This document shows positions 1-5,872 of a DNA stretch of 5,872 nucleotides, piece after piece (within the stretch, counting starts at the first letter, position 1; every line of letters begins with the position of its first letter). The DNA is from Octopus sinensis (Eukaryota). Location of the stretch: NCBI RefSeq assembly GCF_006345805.1, contig NW_021829798.1:1-5872 (forward strand), given 5' to 3'. Both the position numbers and the translations under genes were made by a program. The notes under the pieces are model-generated. The model worked only from the letters and a program-made list of their open reading frames with translations. It was not told where the DNA came from and ran no database searches.

Positions 1-730
1 CAGAAATTTTTTTTTAATTTTTTTGGGGGGGAAGGTTTTAAGGACCTCATCATGTAAGTCGAGGACATCGTAGTTATTCATTTAACCAAAATGCAGAAAT
101 TTTTTTTTAATTTTTTTGGGGGGGAAGGTTTTAAGGACCTCATCATGTAAGTCGAGGACATCGTAGTTGTTCATTTTAACACAAAATGCAGAATTTTTTT
201 TTAATTTTTTTTGGGGGGGAAGGTTTTAAGGACCTCATCATGTAAGTCGAGGACATCGTAATTGTTCATTTTGACCAAAACGCAGAAAAATTTTTTTTAT
301 TTTTTTGGGGGGAAGGTTTTAAGGACCTCATCATGTAAGTCGAGGACATCGTAGTTATTCATTTAACAAATGCAGAAAATTTTTTTTTAATTTTTTTGGG
401 GGGAAGGTTTTAAGGACCTCATCATGTAAGTCGAGGACATCGTAGTTGTTCATTTTAACCAAAATGCAGAAAATTTTTTTTAATTTTTTTTGGGGGGGGA
501 AGGTTTTAAGGACCTCATCATGTAAGTCGAGGACATCGTAGTTGTTCATTTTGACCAAAACGCAGAAAAATTTTTTTTAATTTTTTTTGGGGGGAAGGTT
601 TTAAGGACCTCATCATGTAAGTCGAGGACATCGTAGTTGTTCATTTTGACCAAAACGCAGAAAAAAATTTTTTTTAATTTTTTTTGGGGGAAGGTTTTAA
701 GGACCTCATCATGTAAGTCGAGGACATCGT
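1..730. repeat. Tandem array of ~91-96 bp units (about 8 copies, open at the left window edge)
   Basis: The core GAAGGTTTTAAGGACCTCATCATGTAAGTCGAGGACATCGTA starts at 31, 124, 219, 312, 403, 499, 594 and 690. Copies are joined by near-identical linkers (GTTGTTCATTTT(A/G)ACCAAAA(T/C)GCAG, A/T tracts, G run). Length differences lie almost wholly in homopolymers. Confidence 0.98.
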
Positions 731-753
731 ATTGCCAATTTGAAGTTGGTGTG

Positions 754-830: not shown

Positions 831-960
831 TTCGAATGTGCCAAAAAATTCGGATAGACCATTTATTTTACTACAGGATAATGGACCTTGCCACAGATCT
901 AAAATGGTACAAGATTATATTAAAGAAAAAAACATATTTTACTTCAATACGGCCTACACA
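831..960 (+). pseudogene. Tc1/mariner (IS630-Tc1) DDE transposase fragment
   Basis: In the 637..969 frame: RPFILLQDNGPCHRSKMVQDYIKEKNIFYFNTAY, resembling the second-Asp motif of Tc1-type transposases (F.QDNAPCH.S..V..). It stops before the expected SPDLNPIE motif. Boundaries approximate. Confidence 0.65.
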
Positions 961-992
961 AGCTCGTAATTGCTTCCACGAGCTTAGAAGAG

Positions 993-2112
993 ATGAAATT
1001 AATTGCACGTGAGATTCATGAAGCTAATCATTGCGGACATAATGCTTTGGAAGCCTTATGTAGGCGAAGATTTTTTATATTGAGAAGAGAGATCATTCGC
1101 CAAGTTGTTAAAGAATGCAATATTTGCAAATTTTCAGTTCCACTAAAACAATATGATGATTCAACTCATATTGTTGCTGATTTACCTAATGAAAGATTTC
1201 AAGTAGATTTAATTGATCTTAAACGGTATAAAATTAACTTATTTTGTAGATTTAAAAATGAAAACAATGATTTTTCTTGGTTAATGTCTGTAATAGACGT
1301 ATATTCGAAATATGCGTTTACAAGGAATCTTAAAAATAAAAGTGGAGTAGAGGTGGCGAATAATCTGAATGATATTTTTATGGATTTTGGTCCCTGCAAG
1401 TTTCTCCAATCAGACAACGGAACAGAATTCAAAAATTCTCATGTGACAAAAGTATGTGAAGAGTTTTGTGTTCGACAAATACATGGAAGACCAAACAATC
1501 CCCAGAGTCAGGGAATTGTTGAACGATTTAATCAGACGGTCACAAGGAGCCTTTCAAAAATTATGAGTTTGGATGACACCAAAGAGTGGGTAAAACACAT
1601 AAGAAAGACTGTGTTTTTGTACAATCAAACACCTCATTCATCTACAGGTGAATTATTTGTCTTAAATTTTTTGCAGGCGTTAGCCCTTTGAGAGATATCG
1701 TGGAATTCCTGGATTCAATACTGTTTTAGGAAATACTGATGTTGAGGCAGCTGAACTTCAATACACTCCCGAAATTAACAGTAAATGTTTTAATTCAACT
1801 AAAGATGAATTCGAATTCAACTTCCCAAAAGTTAACTTGGATTCTCCATATTATAAGAGAATGAACAGAAGATGGGAGTGCATGTGTCTAAATATGAATT
1901 AAACATTGGAGACATTGTATTTTTATAATTACTTAAAAGGTTCGCATTCAAAAAGATTATGGGACAAATCCTTCCTTGAGATTAACCAGGTTTGAACATC
2001 CATACGGGGATCCATTCACTATTGTTGCGAAATTGTCTAACAATTTTGTCATGTAAAAAATAGTGATGGATCAGTAATGAAAGTTCATGCCAAACGACTT
2101 AAGAAGTTATAA
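993..2112 (+). CDS. Intron-containing retroviral-type integrase (H2C2 finger, rve DD35E core, SH3-like C-terminus), probably a Ginger/GIN-like DNA transposase; three -1 frameshifts as sequenced
   Basis: Proposed exons 993-1225, 1250-1647, 1677-1916, 1940-2112. Motifs: HEANH...CNIC; QVDLID, QSDNG and IVERFN (35 residues between D and E); YNQTPHSSTGVSPFERYRG; GDIVRIQKDY...HPYGDPFTI...VHAKRLKKL*. One base must be added in each of the runs 1687-1689 (T), 1874-1876 (G) and 2044-2047 (T), giving 348 aa from Met993. The frame is open upstream to 924, so the true N-terminus is uncertain. No reverse transcriptase or gag seen. Confidence 0.85.
1226..1249 (+). other. Tiny spliceosomal intron (24 nt, in frame, no stop)
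   Basis: GTATAAAATTAACTTATTTTGTAG. Removal gives DLIDLKR|FKNENNDFSWLMSVIDVYSKY, closer to the usual spacing after the first catalytic Asp in this integrase type. It preserves frame, so it is not needed to restore the ORF. Confidence 0.7.
1648..1676 (+). other. Tiny spliceosomal intron (29 nt)
   Basis: GTGAATTATTTGTCTTAAATTTTTTGCAG. Removal joins HSSTG to VSP(F), restoring the PHSSTGxSPF motif that follows the integrase core. Confidence 0.85.
1917..1939 (+). other. Tiny spliceosomal intron (23 nt)
   Basis: GTATTTTTATAATTACTTAAAAG, with an in-frame TAA. Removal gives LNIGDI|VRIQKDY, the (I/V)GD.V opening of the integrase C-terminal domain. Confidence 0.8.
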
Positions 2113-2362
2113 CAGTCAGAAATAATAATTGTCCTTGATCTAATCAATAAAATAAGTTATTTTGACATTGATTGACATTGAGTAAATTTGATTGGTCGCG
2201 TCTAGTGCTCGTTCGCGCGCTCGGCTCGCGACATATTACAGTGCGACCTCGAATGGGGAAATTTTTCCCCAATTTTGAGGTTTCCCCCAAAAAAAGGTTT
2301 TTCATTAAATTTAGGTCTCGCCTGTTCGATATCTCTCTTAATAATATAACCGAGACGAATAA

Positions 2363-2957
2363 CTAATTTTTATTTTTAATAAAAAAATCAGTTAATTTTA
2401 ATCGTGTGTTTTGTTTTTTTTTCGCATCGAACTCATAATATTTGCTTTGAATCTGAATAGATCAAGTACATTTTCCGGAGTCTCTTGCTTAATAACATTT
2501 AGCAGCATTGTGAATGCGCATTCCGCATTGTTTATAACTTGTTGATCATCCAATTGTTCCATAATTGTTCGCTGCATCGTGATTCGCCATGTAATATTCT
2601 GAATTTTATTTCGAATTGTTTCTTAAATCTGTAAAGCCATCCATTAGAAGCAGTGAAATCATGATTTGAATTTCTATACGCAATTTTACGTGCAATAAGC
2701 TTTAAGGTTGGCCCATTAATTGGAACCTTTCGACCTGAGATTACGAAAAATCTCGTAAACTTGGGCATTCAATTCTTATCCAATTGTCCCTTCGGATGTT
2801 GAGAAACCTTGAGCTAAGATTCCTTCCCTTTTCTTTTTTAGTCGGTATAGCATTCCTTTAGAGATGTTAATCCTTCACAAATCATTTTGTCCTTATGACC
2901 CGACTGTATATCCTTGCAAATTCTGATCTTTTCACTTTGATTTAGTTTTCTAGGCAT
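2363..2957 (-). pseudogene. pogo/CENP-B-like transposase remnant: N-terminal HTH domains plus C-terminal tail, no DDE domain, several frameshifts
   Basis: From ATG 2957: MPRKLNQSEKIRICKDIQSGHKDKMICEG, then across shifts NISKGMLYRLKKKRE, ELNAQVYEIFRNLRS and VPINGPTLKLIARKIA...FTASNGWLYRFKKQFEIKFRILHGES (Tc5/CENP-B HTH signature). A shifted frame continues MQRTIMEQLDDQQVINNAECAFTMLLNVIKQ...MRKK and, after +1 in the A9 run, QNTRLKLTDFFIKNKN*. Confidence 0.85.
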
Positions 2958-3315
2958 TGGCTTTCTAAAATTATAAAATAACTTTAAAAATTGATAATTT
3001 CAATTTTTTACCAGTTTAATTAGCTAATAACTAATTACCAGGTAAATGATTTTAAAAATATTGATTACTAGGGCAACCAATTGCAATTTTTTGCAATTAA
3101 ATATAATTTAATTAAAATTCGATAAATAATAAAGTAATGAATAGACATTAATTTTAATTATATTTTTATTCGATTTAAATTTGCAATTTTTTGCAATTTT
3201 TTGTAGTCATTTTACAATTTTTGCAATTTTTTAAATTAAAAAAAAAATTTTTTATTAAAAAATAATATAATTATAAGTAAAAGATTATTAAAACGTGTTT
3301 TAGTTGTTTGTTGTA

Positions 3316-4786
3316 ATGGGTAAAAGGACAGTGTCACAGAAAATTTCATTTTATGCAAAGAAATTCCCCGAGTTTGTTATTGACAGTGAAGGGAATTTAT
3401 TTTGCTCCAATTGCTCAACTGTTGTACGGTGTGACACAAAATTTTTTGTTGATGCGCACCGTTCTTCAAAAAAACATTTAAAAGCACACAGTATTTCTTT
3501 GAATTTAAATTTATAGAATGGACAAATTCATCTCAGAGTTCACAAACATTTCTTTCGGCGATAACGGATACTCGAAAGGATTGGGGGATCAAAGTAACAC
3601 AAGCGTTTTTGGAGGCAAACATACCAATTTATAAAATCAGACATCCTTCCCTCATACGGCTTTTTGAGCAGGAAACATATCCTTTGCCATCTGAATCATC
3701 TTGCAGGTTAAATGTTAAAGAAATATCAAAATATAAAATTAATACCATTCAGACTCATTTACTGTTGTTTTTTTTAAGTTATTCAATAGTGGGGAATGTG
3801 TTTTTTTTGTTTGTGATGAAGCCCAAATCAATGGAACTCGTTTTTTAATTACTTTGATTGGGAAAATCTCCACTCCAAAAAATCTTCATTTAGTATCGTG
3901 TACCAATCTATATTATCCGCCTACTACTTCAACAATTTGTGTTGAGGTGGACAAAGTAATAAAGAAATTTTCTATTGAACGTGAAAATTTTATATTATTC
4001 GTTACAGATGGGGCGAGATATATGACCAGTGGTATATATAAATAAATTTAATTTTAGCTGGGGCATCAATGAAATTGATATACCAAAATCTTTTCCACGT
4101 GACTTGCGTGTCACATTTATTGCACAACTGTGCTCTAAAGATTAAGGCATACTTCGCAGATGTTGATGAATTGATTTCGTCTATAAAGGCTGCCACAGTC
4201 AAAAACAAGAGACGTTTGGAGATGTTTTCACGAATCGGAAATCCACCCGAAGTTGTGGTTACAAGATGGGGAAGCTGGCTAAAAGCAGCAAAATATTACT
4301 CCCAGAATCTTCCAGAAATTATTAAAATCGTATCTGAATTTGAAGGAGATGGAGTTTTAATACAAAATGTTTTAGTTTTTAATTATTTTAGGCAAAAAAA
4401 TCAGTGAATAATCCTACGTTGTTTCCAAGCTTAACCCAAATCAGTTCAAATTATTTGGGATTAATTGAAATGATTTCAAATACTGAATTGCTTGATTACT
4501 CCATTGCAACAGCTTATGGTGATCTAAACACCCTAGACTTTACATCAGATCCATGCGACATAAAATCCTATATATCAAAAAAGCTTGAGAAATCAGGAAT
4601 ACTAAGTATTCTTGAATTCTCAAATAAGAATCTATCGCCAGAAGTTTATTCACATCTCAGAAAATGTAGCGCAAGTTCAGCATCTATCGAAAGGGCAATA
4701 TCTCTTTTGACGAAAATCTTAGTAAAGAGAGGAACTTTAAACCTGAAAATGTTCAGGAATATTTGATTTCCTATTACAATAAATAA
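3316..4786 (+). CDS. hAT transposase with CGGBP-like BED zinc finger; five exons; ~456 aa after one +1 correction
   Basis: Proposed exons 3316-3490, 3517-3763, 3790-4031, 4058-4368, 4392-4786. Motifs: LFCSNC...HRSSKKH (BED finger), AFLEANIPIYKIRHP, VCDEAQ (Asp1), FVTDGARYM (Asp2), TCVSHLLH (CxxH), TRWGSW, SASIER (Glu). Adding one A at 4724-4726 changes the end to VKERNFKPENVQEYLISYYNK*, a typical hAT C-terminus. The CGGBP-like label is from memory of the family. Confidence 0.88.
3491..3516 (+). other. Tiny spliceosomal intron (26 nt)
   Basis: GTATTTCTTTGAATTTAAATTTATAG. Its final TAG is the stop of ORF 3304..3516. Removal joins KHLKAH to KWTNSSQS...KVTQAFLEANIP, the frame of ORF 3609. Confidence 0.9.
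3764..3789 (+). other. Tiny spliceosomal intron (26 nt; an alternative donor at 3767 gives 23 nt)
   Basis: GTTGTTTTTTTTAAGTTATTCAATAG. Removal shifts into GECVFFVCDEAQINGTRFLITLIGK, which holds catalytic Asp1 and is the frame of ORF 3854. Both donors give this frame. Confidence 0.8.
4032..4057 (+). other. Tiny spliceosomal intron (26 nt)
   Basis: GTATATATAAATAAATTTAATTTTAG, with an in-frame TAA. Removal gives TDGARYMTS|AGASMKLIYQNLFHVTC, joining ORFs 3854 and 4069. Confidence 0.92.
4369..4391 (+). other. Tiny spliceosomal intron (23 nt)
   Basis: GTTTTAGTTTTTAATTATTTTAG. Removal gives GVLIQN|AKKSVNNP, joining ORFs 4069 and 4404. Confidence 0.88.
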
Positions 4787-5779
4787 TTTCGTTAATTTTT
4801 TGCATAATGTAATGTTTACAATTAAAAAAAATTATTTTTGCAATTTTTTACAATTTTTAAAATTCATTTTTGCAATTTTTTTTATTAAAAAGTGCAATTT
4901 TTTGTTGCCCTATTGATTACAAATTTGGAAACTTAGTTACAATAAATAAATAATAAAATCAAAAATTATACAAATATATTATGAATCGTTATGCTAATAT
5001 AAAATTTTTCCCCGGTAGGGGGTTTATTTCATTAAAAATCATCGTATTTTATAGGGATGGCAAAAATATTTCCCCAAAAGCAAGGTTTTTCCCCAAAAAA
5101 GAGGGTTTCCCCGCTACTTGGTTTTCCCAATTCGAGGTCGCACTGTATTAAATTGCAAAAAATCAGCAGATTCGAGAGGTTTTAATAATAATGAAAAAAA
5201 TAATTAAAGGAACAAACAAATAAAATCGAGTTATAAAATGTTTATTCAGAAAATTTTTTTAAAAAATAAGAGAAAATTTGATAATAATATGACTAAGAAA
5301 TAATAGTGCTTAGAGTTTCAAAATAAATAAAAGAAACAGATCAAAGGAATAAAACCGGAAAATATACAAAAATGATGAAATTTCAGATAATTTAATATTA
5401 AAAGAAACCACATCTCGCATTATTCCTTCTACATCCAATTAAATAAAAAAATAAAGTGTGATCAAAATTGATAAAATACAACAAAGTGAATCGACTCCGT
5501 AATAACACGTGGCTTAATTATTAAGTTTTTTAGTAAAAATTAAGATAATGAAAAATAATTAATAAAAATAAATTTTATTTTAATTACAACAAATTGTACT
5601 AACTTTATTTTGATAAAATCTTTACGTGTCATTTTTAATAGTTCGCAGGTCTAGCTGCAAAAATAAGTGAATTTCTAAATAACAAAAAACGGACTAAGTA
5701 TAAAATTGGAATGATTTATGAAAATGTTTAAATTTCAAGCATAATGAATGGATAGTTAGTTCGTGAATATTCTTTAGAA

Positions 5780-5872
5780 CAGGCCTGGCCAACCCAATCG
5801 CATCGCGGGCCACTTGTGTCCAAATGAATCCTTTCCGCGGGCCGCATATACATGTACATACTAAGGATAGAT
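5780..5872. mobile_element. Probable terminus of a second hAT element (Buster/Charlie-like), running out of the window
   Basis: Abrupt switch to GC-rich sequence at CAGGCCTGGCCAACC, with two CGCGGGCC motifs (5804, 5836) like Charlie/Buster-type ends. The preceding 8-mer CTTTAGAA fits the Buster nnnTAnnn target preference. The other end is not visible. Confidence 0.6.

What the first reader, a model, noticed from the sequence alone, without database searches (positions are those of the whole stretch)
1226..4391. Seven 23-29 nt GT-AG introns inside two unrelated DNA transposon genes
Seen: introns at 1226-1249, 1648-1676, 1917-1939, 3491-3516, 3764-3789, 4032-4057 and 4369-4391. Six of the seven are needed to rebuild the frame, and each join restores a family motif. 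All are AT-rich, start GT, end AG and contain TTAA, ending 3-12 nt before the intron end. Known: introns this short occur in few lineages (Paramecium, microsporidia, dicyemids, nucleomorphs; small introns are also reported in myxozoans). TAA/TAG end the genes here, arguing against the Paramecium code, and there is no fixed GTAAGT/CTAAC signal as in microsporidia. Inference: two different mobile elements carry introns sized for a miniaturised host splicing system, by shrinkage or gain in this lineage. Standard predictors would call these fragments or pseudogenes.
Basis: partly seen in the sequence, partly recalled or inferred. Interest (0 to 1): 0.82.

Follow-up and report, generated by a model that had tools for sequence, protein, structure and literature searches.

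The report
Tiny introns inside two transposon genes
Two unrelated DNA transposons in an AT-rich eukaryotic genome, a hAT element and a Ginger2-like integrase element, carry four and three intron-like inserts of only 23-29 bases; this fits the ultra-short introns known from a few parasite lineages, and the single-exon relatives suggest that at least the hAT introns were gained.

Summary
All seven segments start GT and end AG. They are 24, 29, 23, 26, 26, 26 and 23 nt long and 16% GC, against 34% in the exons. Each is a clean insertion relative to homologous proteins. Removing the four in gene 2 gives one ORF that aligns end to end, without gaps at the well-aligned joins, with more than 40 single-exon homologues. 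Keeping any segment costs 10-16 bits against a homologue profile.

Gene 2 is the transposase of a complete hAT element (3069-4912) with 8-bp target-site duplications; the predicted structure of a 41%-identical relative matches the Hermes transposase. Gene 1 is the integrase of a Ginger2-like DNA transposon. A microsporidian relative is a single ORF between 213-nt inverted repeats with the same terminus.

- Gene 1 is 5'-truncated and needs three more 1-nt frame changes.
- Gene 2, as read, ends at TGA; the homologous end is TAA.
- TTAA in all seven segments is only marginally above chance (p about 0.03).

Splicing itself and the host organism remain untested. Ultra-short introns and intron-bearing transposase genes are each already known, so this is a new member of a known kind. 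The likely intron gain in the hAT gene is the interesting part.

The parts
930..2235 (+). Ginger2-like DNA transposon remnant. It is 5'-truncated, and homology to the 424-458 aa stand-alone integrases starts at about their residue 41-55.
   Evidence: tblastn, homologue search, alignment A2. The 3' terminus matches the terminal repeat of the D. muelleri relative.
963..2112 (+). Integrase coding region (H2C2 zinc finger, rve core, SH3-like C-terminus), ending at TAA 2110-2112. Exons: 963-1225, 1250-1647, 1677-1916, 1940-2112.
   Evidence: Pfam rve 1.9e-12, Integrase_H2C2 3.3e-6. PDB profile hits to PFV integrase at 1e-27 and to Ty3.
1226..1249 (+). Gene 1 intron 1: 24 nt, phase 2, length a multiple of 3 with no stop codon.
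   Evidence: No homologue has these 8 residues. About 23-24 nt are extra relative to D. muelleri DNA at this point. Keeping it costs 11.6 bits.
1648..1676 (+). Gene 1 intron 2: 29 nt, phase 1.
   Evidence: The join gives HSSTG|VSP, gap-free against HSA..K.SPF in homologues. It is the only short GT-AG solution here. Keeping it costs 13.9 bits.
1917..1939 (+). Gene 1 intron 3: 23 nt, phase 0.
   Evidence: The join gives NIGDI|VRIQKDYGTNPSL, gap-free against CIGKKVRVYKDFGTNPSL. Keeping it costs 12.1 bits and introduces a stop.
1684..1689 (+). 1-nt frame change (one base missing) in gene 1: GVSP | FERYRG.
1866..1872 (+). 1-nt frame change (one base missing) in gene 1: YYKRMNR | MGVHVSKY.
2048..2053 (+). 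1-nt frame change (one base missing) in gene 1: LSNNFV | VKNSDGS.
2213..2235 (+). GC-rich 3' terminus of the Ginger2-like element: ...GCGCGCTCGGCTCGCGACATA.
   Evidence: Same terminus as the D. muelleri repeat end ...GCGCGCGACATA.
2239..5145 (-). Context: an internally deleted pogo-like element. Its inverted repeat is CAGTGCGACCTCGAAT and it is flanked by TA at 2237-2238 and 5146-5147. It inserted just outside the Ginger2-like terminus and hosts the hAT element. Its coding remnant (about 2400-2960, minus strand) has stops but no tiny intron.
   Evidence: Inverted repeat I1, HTH_Tnp_Tc5 3.1e-10.
3061..3068 (.). Left 8-bp target-site duplication of the hAT element: TTGATTAC.
3069..4912 (+). Complete hAT element, 1844 bp. 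Its inverted repeat is TAGGGCAAC / GTTGCCCTA, and the subterminal motif TGCAATTTTTT occurs seven times.
   Evidence: Relatives share the TAGGGCAA terminus.
4913..4920 (.). Right 8-bp target-site duplication: TTGATTAC.
3316..4786 (+). hAT transposase gene: ATG at 3316 and homologous stop TAA at 4784-4786 (as-read stop TGA at 4764-4766). Exons: 3316-3490, 3517-3763, 3790-4031, 4058-4368, 4392-4786.
   Evidence: Spliced ORF. 70 homologues, 35-48% identity, many full length. Alignment A1. DUF659.
3491..3516 (+). Gene 2 intron 1: 26 nt, phase 1.
   Evidence: Restores the frame and contains an in-frame TAG if kept. It lies next to a variable, disordered linker. Keeping it costs 9.6 bits.
3764..3789 (+). 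Gene 2 intron 2: 26 nt, phase 2.
   Evidence: The join gives HLL|GECVFFVCDE, the same length as homologues, just before the catalytic D150. Keeping it costs 12.0 bits.
4032..4057 (+). Gene 2 intron 3: 26 nt, phase 1.
   Evidence: The join gives ARYMTS|AGASMK against AARYMTSAGSTLK. tblastn query residue 225 falls on both sides of the segment. Three stops arise if kept. Keeping it costs 16.1 bits.
4369..4391 (+). Gene 2 intron 4: 23 nt, phase 0.
   Evidence: The join gives GVLIQN|AKKSV against GVIVEKAKQSV. tblastn query residues 327 and 329 flank it. Keeping it costs 14.2 bits.
4717..4723 (+). 1-nt frame change (one base missing) near the end of the hAT gene: ...LLTKI | SKERNFKPENVQEYLISYYNK.

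Best explanation
The seven segments are genuine U2-type GT-AG spliceosomal introns of 23-29 nt inside the transposase genes of two resident DNA transposons.

Proposed mechanism:
- The host spliceosome recognises a minimal 5' site: GTA in 4 of 7, GTT in 2, GTG in 1.
- It then uses an A-containing stretch a few bases upstream of the 3' AG (the TTAA/AA region) and a 3' AG, which is TAG in 5 of 7. The sharp drop in GC (16% against 34% in exons) probably helps recognition.
- Only spliced mRNA encodes a full transposase: a hAT enzyme with its D, D, E, CxxH and RW residues intact, and a Ginger2-like integrase.

Shown here: the sequence signals, the restoration of frame and ORF, and the gap-free fit to homologues.

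Inferred:
- That splicing happens.
- That the host genome as a whole has introns of this size. The best-fitting known lineages are dicyemids and myxobolid myxozoans.
- That the hAT introns were gained after the element diverged from its single-exon relatives.
For: 1. Boundaries and lengths are as described.
2. Removing the four gene 2 segments turns five frame-shifted pieces into one ORF from ATG 3316. Over 456 residues it aligns with homologues of about 455-465 aa, with no gap at joins 2, 3 and 4.
3. tblastn matches break exactly at the segments, with consecutive query residues on either side.
4. Scores against a profile built from homologues only, gene 2: 564.6 bits spliced, 548.5-555.0 with one segment kept, 512.9 with all kept. 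Gene 1: 416.5 bits spliced, 402.6-404.9 with one kept, 379.0 with all kept.
5. Two of the gene 2 segments and one of the gene 1 segments contain in-frame stops.
6. Joins 3 and 4 of gene 2 fall inside helices of a confident model of a family member (pLDDT 90.8).
7. D. muelleri DNA lacks about 23-24 nt exactly at gene 1 intron 1.
8. The chance that seven homology-defined insertions all carry GT and AG is about 4e-17.
9. Size and signals match published ultra-short animal introns. Henneguya salminicola has a median of 27 bp in a genome of 29% GC, and Dicyema has a median of 27 bp. In these lineages the 5' site is reduced to GTa and a few weak A residues sit upstream of the AG (PMC13644364; PMC6543705).
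10. The code looks standard. There is no in-frame TAA, TAG or TGA in 456 codons, Gln is always CAA or CAG, and the homologous C-terminus ends at TAA.
Against: - There is no transcript evidence.
- The source organism was not identified, and no host gene lies in the window, so the size of host introns is unknown.
- Only one copy of each element is available.
- Gene 1 is a truncated copy with three extra frame changes, so it cannot now make a product. Its intron 1 is a multiple of 3 with no stop, so retaining it would not break the frame.
- TTAA is only marginally enriched (p about 0.03).
- The best named relatives of both elements come from microsporidia, a group with very few introns. Their 5' splice sites are strongly conserved as GTAAGT (from general knowledge), which none of the seven segments has.
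Confidence: 0.85

Rival explanations
1. The segments are ordinary insertion mutations in decaying transposon copies. They are not removed from the RNA, and both genes are dead.
For: Gene 1 is clearly damaged: it is 5'-truncated and has three 1-nt frame changes. Gene 2 has one frame change. Short AT-rich insertions can arise by slippage in AT-rich DNA.
Against: - All seven insertions start GT and end AG (about 4e-17 by chance).
- Their lengths fall in a narrow band, 23-29 nt.
- They resemble neither their flanks nor each other, so they are not slippage duplicates.
- The true damage in these genes is of a different kind: four single-base losses.
- After removal, the hAT ORF has no stop in 456 codons of 34% GC sequence, and the element has a perfect target-site duplication, so the copy is young.
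Confidence: 0.05
2. The segments are germline-limited DNA removed by programmed elimination, like ciliate internal eliminated sequences, rather than RNA introns.
For: The shortest eliminated sequences of Paramecium are about 26-28 bp and AT-rich (general knowledge). The window is rich in transposons and satellite DNA, like a germline genome.
Against: - Only 1 of 7 segments can be placed between two TA dinucleotides at the same offset.
- All seven have GT-AG boundaries.
- The genetic code looks standard: no in-frame TAA or TAG, and TAA at the homologous C-terminus. This excludes Paramecium-type ciliates.
Confidence: 0.03
3. On origin only: the introns are ancestral to the two transposon families and shrank to host size here, while the single-exon relatives lost them. 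On this reading they are not new gains.
For: Relatives were found through gene calls that favour long uninterrupted ORFs, so intron-bearing relatives would be under-sampled. The named relatives of the integrase are microsporidian, a group known for wholesale intron loss. Some Ginger1 and hAT transposase genes elsewhere do have introns (PMC2836005; PMC3942097 abstract).
Against: - In a neighbour-joining tree the window hAT protein sits inside a radiation of 47 full-length family members, with several branching deeper. All those whose DNA was examined are single-exon.
- The integrase relatives examined are single ORFs. P0072 was checked on its DNA. P0071 and P0075 sit on contigs too short to hold introns.
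- No relative shows an interruption at any of the seven positions. The one larger gap seen, in L004, lies elsewhere.
Confidence: 0.3

Closest known systems
Ultra-short spliceosomal introns of dicyemids (Dicyema japonicum, Dicyema sp.) and myxobolid myxozoans (Henneguya salminicola, Thelohanellus kitauei, Myxobolus spp.)
   Same: - GT-AG introns with medians of 22-27 bp.
- A 5' site reduced to GTa and a 3' site reduced to AG.
[quoted passage not shown]
- AT-rich genomes (H. salminicola 29% GC, Dicyema 36.7%) and a standard genetic code (PMC13644364, PMC6543705, PMC6736024).
- The window introns are 23-29 nt with a median of 26.
   Different: Those reports describe host protein-coding genes. In the papers read here I found no report of such introns inside transposase genes. 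The window could not be assigned to either lineage.
Paramecium and other ciliate tiny introns
   Same: Lengths of about 20-30 nt, AT-rich, GTA...TAG ends (general knowledge).
   Different: The Paramecium code reads TAA and TAG as Gln. Here neither occurs in frame in 456 codons, and TAA ends the homologous ORF. Stentor uses the standard code, but its introns are 15-16 nt (PMC13644364).
Microsporidian short introns
   Same: Some are 23-30 nt. The nearest named relatives of both transposons come from microsporidia of amphipods (Dictyocoela, Nosema granulosis, Cucumispora).
   Different: Microsporidia have very few introns, with a strongly conserved GTAAGT 5' site (general knowledge). None of the seven has GTAAGT. 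The density here is about one intron per 350 bp of coding sequence. The Dictyocoela copy of the integrase gene has no intron.
Intron-bearing transposase genes: Ginger1 (1-4 introns), the five-exon hAT element BuT2, the maize Ac element, P elements
   Same: These are DNA transposons whose transposase needs host splicing. Ginger1 genes have 1-4 canonical GT-AG introns (PMC2836005). BuT2 is a five-exon hAT gene (PMC3942097 abstract).
   Different: As far as I know, their introns are of ordinary size for their hosts. Here they are 23-29 nt, and the close relatives examined are single-exon.

Membership tests
U2-type GT-AG spliceosomal intron | GT at the 5' end and AG at the 3' end | tested here: met
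   7 of 7.
U2-type GT-AG spliceosomal intron | Removal restores the reading frame and a gap-free fit to homologous proteins | tested here: met
   Join 1 of gene 2 is fixed by frame only, because it lies in a variable linker.
U2-type GT-AG spliceosomal intron | Branch-point signal upstream of the 3' AG | tested here: inconclusive
   TTAA occurs in 7 of 7, 3-12 nt from the 3' end, but p is about 0.03 given the composition.
U2-type GT-AG spliceosomal intron | Absent from mature mRNA | not testable with these tools
   No transcript data. The source organism is unknown.
hAT superfamily (gene 2 element) | 8-bp target-site duplication and short terminal inverted repeats | tested here: met
   TTGATTAC at 3061-3068 and 4913-4920; TAGGGCAAC / GTTGCCCTA. 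Relatives share the TAGGGCAA terminus.
hAT superfamily (gene 2 element) | Hermes-like transposase fold | tested here: met
   Model of family member P0001 (41% identical to the window protein): pLDDT 90.8. The top PDB matches are all Hermes transposase, E 1e-10 to 2e-8, TM about 0.5. The window protein itself could not be submitted.
hAT superfamily (gene 2 element) | Conserved catalytic D, D, E plus the CxxH and RW motifs | tested here: met
   D150, E151, D214, C238, H241, R291, W292 and E425 are invariant or nearly invariant columns, and all are present in the window protein.
hAT superfamily (gene 2 element) | Pfam hAT C-terminal dimerisation domain (PF05699) | tested here: inconclusive
   Weak hits in 4 of 22 family members and none in the window protein. 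DUF659 matches 22 of 22.
Ginger2/Tdd DNA transposons (gene 1 element) | Transposase with an H2C2 zinc finger and a retroviral-type DDE integrase core, and no reverse transcriptase or RNase H | tested here: met
   Pfam Integrase_H2C2, zf-H2C2 and rve. Relatives are stand-alone proteins of 424-458 aa. In L002 the ORF fills the space between the inverted repeats.
Ginger2/Tdd DNA transposons (gene 1 element) | Terminal inverted repeats of about 50-300 bp | tested here: inconclusive
   Met in the D. muelleri relative (213 nt, 98%). The window copy keeps only the 3' terminus because its 5' end is missing.
Ginger2/Tdd DNA transposons (gene 1 element) | 4-bp target-site duplication and TGTNR termini | tested here: inconclusive
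   In L002, TTAT flanks both ends if the repeat starts TATGTCG. TGTCG fits TGTNR but is offset by 2 nt. This rests on one copy. It cannot be tested in the window.
Ginger2/Tdd DNA transposons (gene 1 element) | Lacks the YPYY and GPY/F motifs of Ginger1 and Gypsy integrases | not tested
   No motif search was done.
Host lineage with introns under 30 nt: Dicyemida or Myxobolidae | Intron length mode of 22-27 nt, a GTa 5' site and a standard code | tested here: met
   Median 26 nt, GTA in 4 of 7, standard code, compared with PMC13644364 and PMC6543705.
Host lineage with introns under 30 nt: Dicyemida or Myxobolidae | The sequence actually comes from such an organism | not testable with these tools
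   Exact-pattern scans of three collections and the protein look-ups found no source.
Paramecium-type ciliate intron or eliminated sequence | TAA and TAG read as Gln; eliminated sequences bounded by TA | tested here: not met
   No in-frame TAA or TAG; TAA ends the homologous ORF. TA-TA placement is possible for 1 of 7.
Microsporidian intron | Strongly conserved GTAAGT 5' site; very few introns per genome | tested here: not met
   0 of 7 have GTAAGT. There are seven introns in 2.4 kb of coding sequence.

The most novel reading that the evidence does not exclude
Both transposons entered this lineage, or its ancestors, as single-exon genes like the relatives examined here. They then acquired three and four ultra-short introns de novo, about one per 350 bp. 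That would make them a rare, datable record of recent intron creation in a genome with a miniaturised splicing system. It would also mean the elements can only be expressed where 23-29 nt introns are spliced.
Probability: 0.35. Interest if true: 0.7.

Novelty: new member of a known kind. Interest (0 to 1): 0.45.

Why it matters
Introns below 30 nt are confined to a handful of lineages, and how they are recognised is still an open question. Transposon genes offer a natural experiment, because their relatives in other genomes show what the gene looked like before.

Here more than 40 relatives of the hAT gene are full-length proteins in single-ORF gene calls. Seven clean insertions with splice signals therefore point to intron gain, an event that is seldom caught.

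If confirmed, the elements would give:
- dated examples of new ultra-short introns;
- minimal natural substrates (23 nt) for studying splice-site recognition;
- an example of a transposon whose expression depends on a peculiarity of its host's spliceosome.

In practice, gene and repeat annotation pipelines with a minimum intron length of 30-40 nt would call both genes broken.

Tried and rejected
**Finding the source organism.** Nothing was found.
- An exact-product look-up of a window ORF was not on record, and the spliced product was not accepted.
- Exact DNA patterns were scanned in viral contigs (one search gave only chance 17-mer hits), metagenome contigs and prokaryotic genome contigs.

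**Looking for relatives with introns.**
- The partial hAT hits L004 and L005 show a simple frameshift and a gap of about 400 nt at another position, not tiny introns.
- A family scan of viral contigs found nothing.

**Ruling out other origins for the segments.**
- Paramecium-style TA-bounded excision fits 1 of 7.
- The segments are no more similar to their flanks or to each other than shuffled versions. Local duplication or a common 'introner' family is therefore unlikely.

**Other checks.**
- Alternative short GT-AG boundaries exist for gene 2 introns 2, 3 and 4 (3767-3789, 4029-4057, 4375-4391 and 4354-4391).
- My first reading of 2234-2261 / 5123-5150 as a 28-nt inverted repeat was refined to a TA-flanked CAGTG... 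pogo-like repeat.
- My first hAT left boundary was off by one and was corrected.
- The pogo-like fragment found no homologues.
- Rfam and tRNA scans of the window found nothing meaningful.
- A PDB sequence-profile search did not reach Hermes. Only the fold comparison did.

Full report
**Layout of the window**

The window is 5872 bp and 31% GC, and it is a stack of repeats.
- A 95-bp satellite occupies 1-731 (7.8 copies), followed by (ACAG)n at 755-800.
- A short Tc1/mariner-like remnant with the motif ...ILLQDNGPCH... lies at about 845-940.
- A 5'-truncated integrase element runs from about 930 to 2235.
- An internally deleted pogo-like element occupies 2239-5145. Its inverted repeat is CAGTGCGACCTCGAAT and it is flanked by TA on both sides. 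It carries a decayed HTH_Tnp_Tc5 coding remnant on the minus strand.
- A complete hAT element sits nested inside the pogo-like element at 3069-4912.
- AT-rich sequence follows, ending in a GC-rich palindromic fragment at about 5780-5850.

No host gene is visible. tRNA and Rfam scans are empty or insignificant.

**The observation**

All seven segments sit at the stated coordinates and begin GT and end AG. They are 24, 29, 23, 26, 26, 26 and 23 nt long. Their pooled GC is 15.8%, against 34% for the exons of both genes. Each has one TTAA ending 3-12 nt before the 3' end. Given how T- and A-rich the segments are, all seven having TTAA has a probability of about 0.03, so this is only a weak signal.

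The pattern alone is cheap. The + strand holds 114 GT..AG strings of 23-29 nt, 53 of them inside the two genes. The evidence has to come from elsewhere, and it does.

**Gene 2 (hAT)**

Unspliced, the gene is five pieces in three frames. Removing the four segments gives one ORF from ATG 3316. A database search with the spliced protein found 70 homologues at 35-48% identity. Many are 450-465 aa and cover 95-100% of the query, and nearly all are uninterrupted ORFs on contigs of about 2 kb.

Position of the joins in the alignment:
- Join 2 (HLL|GECVFFVCDE), join 3 (ARYMTS|AGASMK) and join 4 (GVLIQN|AKKSV) fall in well-aligned blocks with no gap.
- Join 1 lies in a variable linker, where only the frame constrains it.

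Further tests agree.
- tblastn with homologues breaks exactly at the segments, with consecutive query residues on either side: 225/225 and 327/329.
- Against a profile built from 40 homologues only, the spliced protein scores 564.6 bits. Keeping any one segment, padded to preserve the frame, gives 548.5-555.0 bits. Keeping all four gives 512.9 bits. Two of the segments contain in-frame stops.
- A few alternative short GT-AG boundaries exist, but they add or delete residues relative to the family.
- The protein keeps the family's invariant D150/E151, D214, C238..H241, R291-W292 and E425.

A single missing base near 4720 shifts the last 30 codons. As read, the ORF ends at TGA (4764-4766). In the shifted frame it continues ...SKERNFKPENVQEYLISYYNK and stops at TAA (4784-4786), exactly where homologues end.

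**That gene 2 is a hAT transposon**

- The element has a TAGGGCAAC/GTTGCCCTA inverted repeat and a perfect 8-bp duplication, TTGATTAC. The subterminal motif TGCAATTTTTT occurs seven times.
- Two relatives whose DNA was fetched carry the same TAGGGCAA terminus.
- Pfam DUF659 matches all 22 aligned members, while the hAT dimerisation domain matches only weakly in 4.
- An AlphaFold model of family member P0001 (pLDDT 90.8) has Hermes transposase structures as its top twelve PDB matches (E 1e-10 to 2e-8, TM about 0.5).
- Mapped onto that model, joins 3 and 4 fall inside helices, and join 1 sits next to the disordered linker.

**Gene 1 (integrase)**

Pfam finds Integrase_H2C2, zf-H2C2 and rve. A family profile hits PFV integrase and Ty3 in the PDB. 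The best homologues are stand-alone proteins of 424-458 aa from Dictyocoela roeselum, D. muelleri and Nosema granulosis (40-54% identity), with KRBA2-like proteins further away.

The three joins are gap-free against these homologues:
- DLIDLKR|FKNENN
- HSSTG|VSPF
- NIGDI|VRIQKDYGTNPSL

Keeping a segment costs 11.6-13.9 bits, and keeping all three costs 37.5 bits. At the DNA level, the D. muelleri gene lacks about 23-24 nt exactly at intron 1.

Homology starts only at about residue 41-55 of the relatives. Three further single-base frame changes are needed, at about 1686, 1870 and 2051. All four frame changes in the window are missing bases. They may be real decay or long-read assembly errors, and I cannot tell which.

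**That gene 1 is a DNA transposon and not a retroelement**

In D. muelleri the 450-aa ORF is uninterrupted (locus L002, 4974-6326). It lies between 213-nt inverted repeats that are 98% complementary. Those repeats end ...GCGCGCGACATA, with TTAT on both sides.

The window copy ends ...GCGCGCTCGGCTCGCGACATA at 2235. Joining the flanks of the pogo-like insertion restores ...CGCGACATA TTAT T.... This matches the published description of Ginger2/Tdd: an H2C2 plus DDE integrase, inverted repeats of 50-300 bp, a 4-bp duplication, TGTNR-like termini and AT-rich targets (PMC2836005). Formal placement was not tested.

**Alternatives**

- Random insertions. These are unlikely. With boundary slack taken into account, GT and AG at all seven homology-defined insertions has a probability of about 4e-17. 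The lengths are tightly clustered. The segments resemble neither their flanks nor one another.
- Ciliate-style DNA elimination. TA-TA placement works for 1 of 7, and the genetic code looks standard. There is no in-frame TAA or TAG in the spliced hAT ORF, all 11 Gln codons are CAA or CAG, and TAA sits at the homologous C-terminus.
- Microsporidian-type introns. None of the seven has GTAAGT, and the density is far too high for that group.

**Comparison with what is known**

Median intron lengths are 27 bp in Henneguya salminicola (genome 29% GC), 22 bp in Thelohanellus kitauei and Myxobolus rasmusseni, and 27 bp in Dicyema sp. The 5' site is reduced to GTa and the 3' site to AG, with a few weak A residues upstream of it (PMC13644364; PMC6543705; PMC6736024). 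The window introns fit this description: median 26 nt, GTA in 4 of 7, TAG in 5 of 7.

Transposase genes with introns are also known. Ginger1 genes have 1-4, and BuT2 is a five-exon hAT gene. Neither half of the finding is therefore new in kind.

**Gain or shrinkage**

In a neighbour-joining tree the window hAT protein sits inside a poorly resolved radiation of 47 full-length family members, with several branching deeper. Those whose DNA was examined are single-exon. No relative is interrupted at any of the seven positions. This favours gain for the four hAT introns.

For the integrase the direction is less clear, because its named relatives live in microsporidia, which shed introns. Sampling is also biased towards uninterrupted ORFs. 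The pogo-like remnant has about 190 codons without any tiny intron, so such introns are not universal among the transposons here.

**Verdict**

Splicing and host identity are untested. I rate this a new member of a known kind and of moderate interest. It would be of higher interest if recent intron gain is confirmed.

Noticed in passing
window 1-731: Tandem satellite: 95-bp unit, 7.8 copies, 93% matches, with G-runs inside otherwise AT-rich sequence. It is followed at 755-800 by an (ACAG)n microsatellite.
   Followed up: no
window ~845-940 (+): Short Tc1/mariner-type transposase remnant (...RPFILLQDNGPCHRSKMVQDYIKEKNI...). It abuts, and slightly overlaps in another frame, the truncated 5' end of the integrase element. 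No Pfam hit was obtained on this short piece.
   Followed up: partly
window 2239-5145 (-), coding remnant ~2400-2960: Internally deleted pogo-like element with TA duplications and a CAGTGCGACCTCGAAT inverted repeat. Subterminal repeats of the form TTTCCCC-AAAAAA-GG occur at both ends (TRF array 5069-5112). Its N-terminal coding remnant has in-frame TAA, TAG and TGA stops and one frame change, but no tiny intron. No homologue was found in the protein database.
   Followed up: partly
window ~1686, ~1870, ~2051, ~4720: All four frame changes outside the introns are single missing bases. This one-sided pattern is what uncorrected long-read assemblies produce, so both genes may be less damaged in the organism than in this sequence.
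   Followed up: no
window 5780-5850: GC-rich fragment in AT-rich surroundings with repeated CGCGGGCC motifs (GGCCTGGCCAACC...CGCGGGCCAC...CCGCGGGCCGC), running close to the end of the window. From memory it resembles termini of miniature inverted-repeat elements seen in various animals. This was not tested.
   Followed up: no
hAT protein residues ~30-60 (window 3403-3490); alignment A1: The N-terminal C-x2-C...H-x5-H zinc finger of this hAT family gives weak profile hits to the zinc finger of the U1 snRNP protein U1-C (E 0.012). It is probably just a shared matrin/U1-type finger fold.
   Followed up: no
L002 4756-4968 and 6359-6571 (Dictyocoela muelleri, GCA_016256075.1): The protein annotated 'Gag-Pol polyprotein' in this microsporidian is in fact the single ORF of a compact element of about 1.8 kb. 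It has 213-nt terminal inverted repeats (98%) and TTAT on both sides, so it is a Ginger2-like DNA transposon rather than a retroelement.
   Followed up: partly
gene 1 intron 1, window 1226-1249: This is the only intron whose length is a multiple of 3, and it has no in-frame stop. From general knowledge, that is the class depleted in Paramecium, where intron retention would escape surveillance. It sits in the damaged copy.
   Followed up: no
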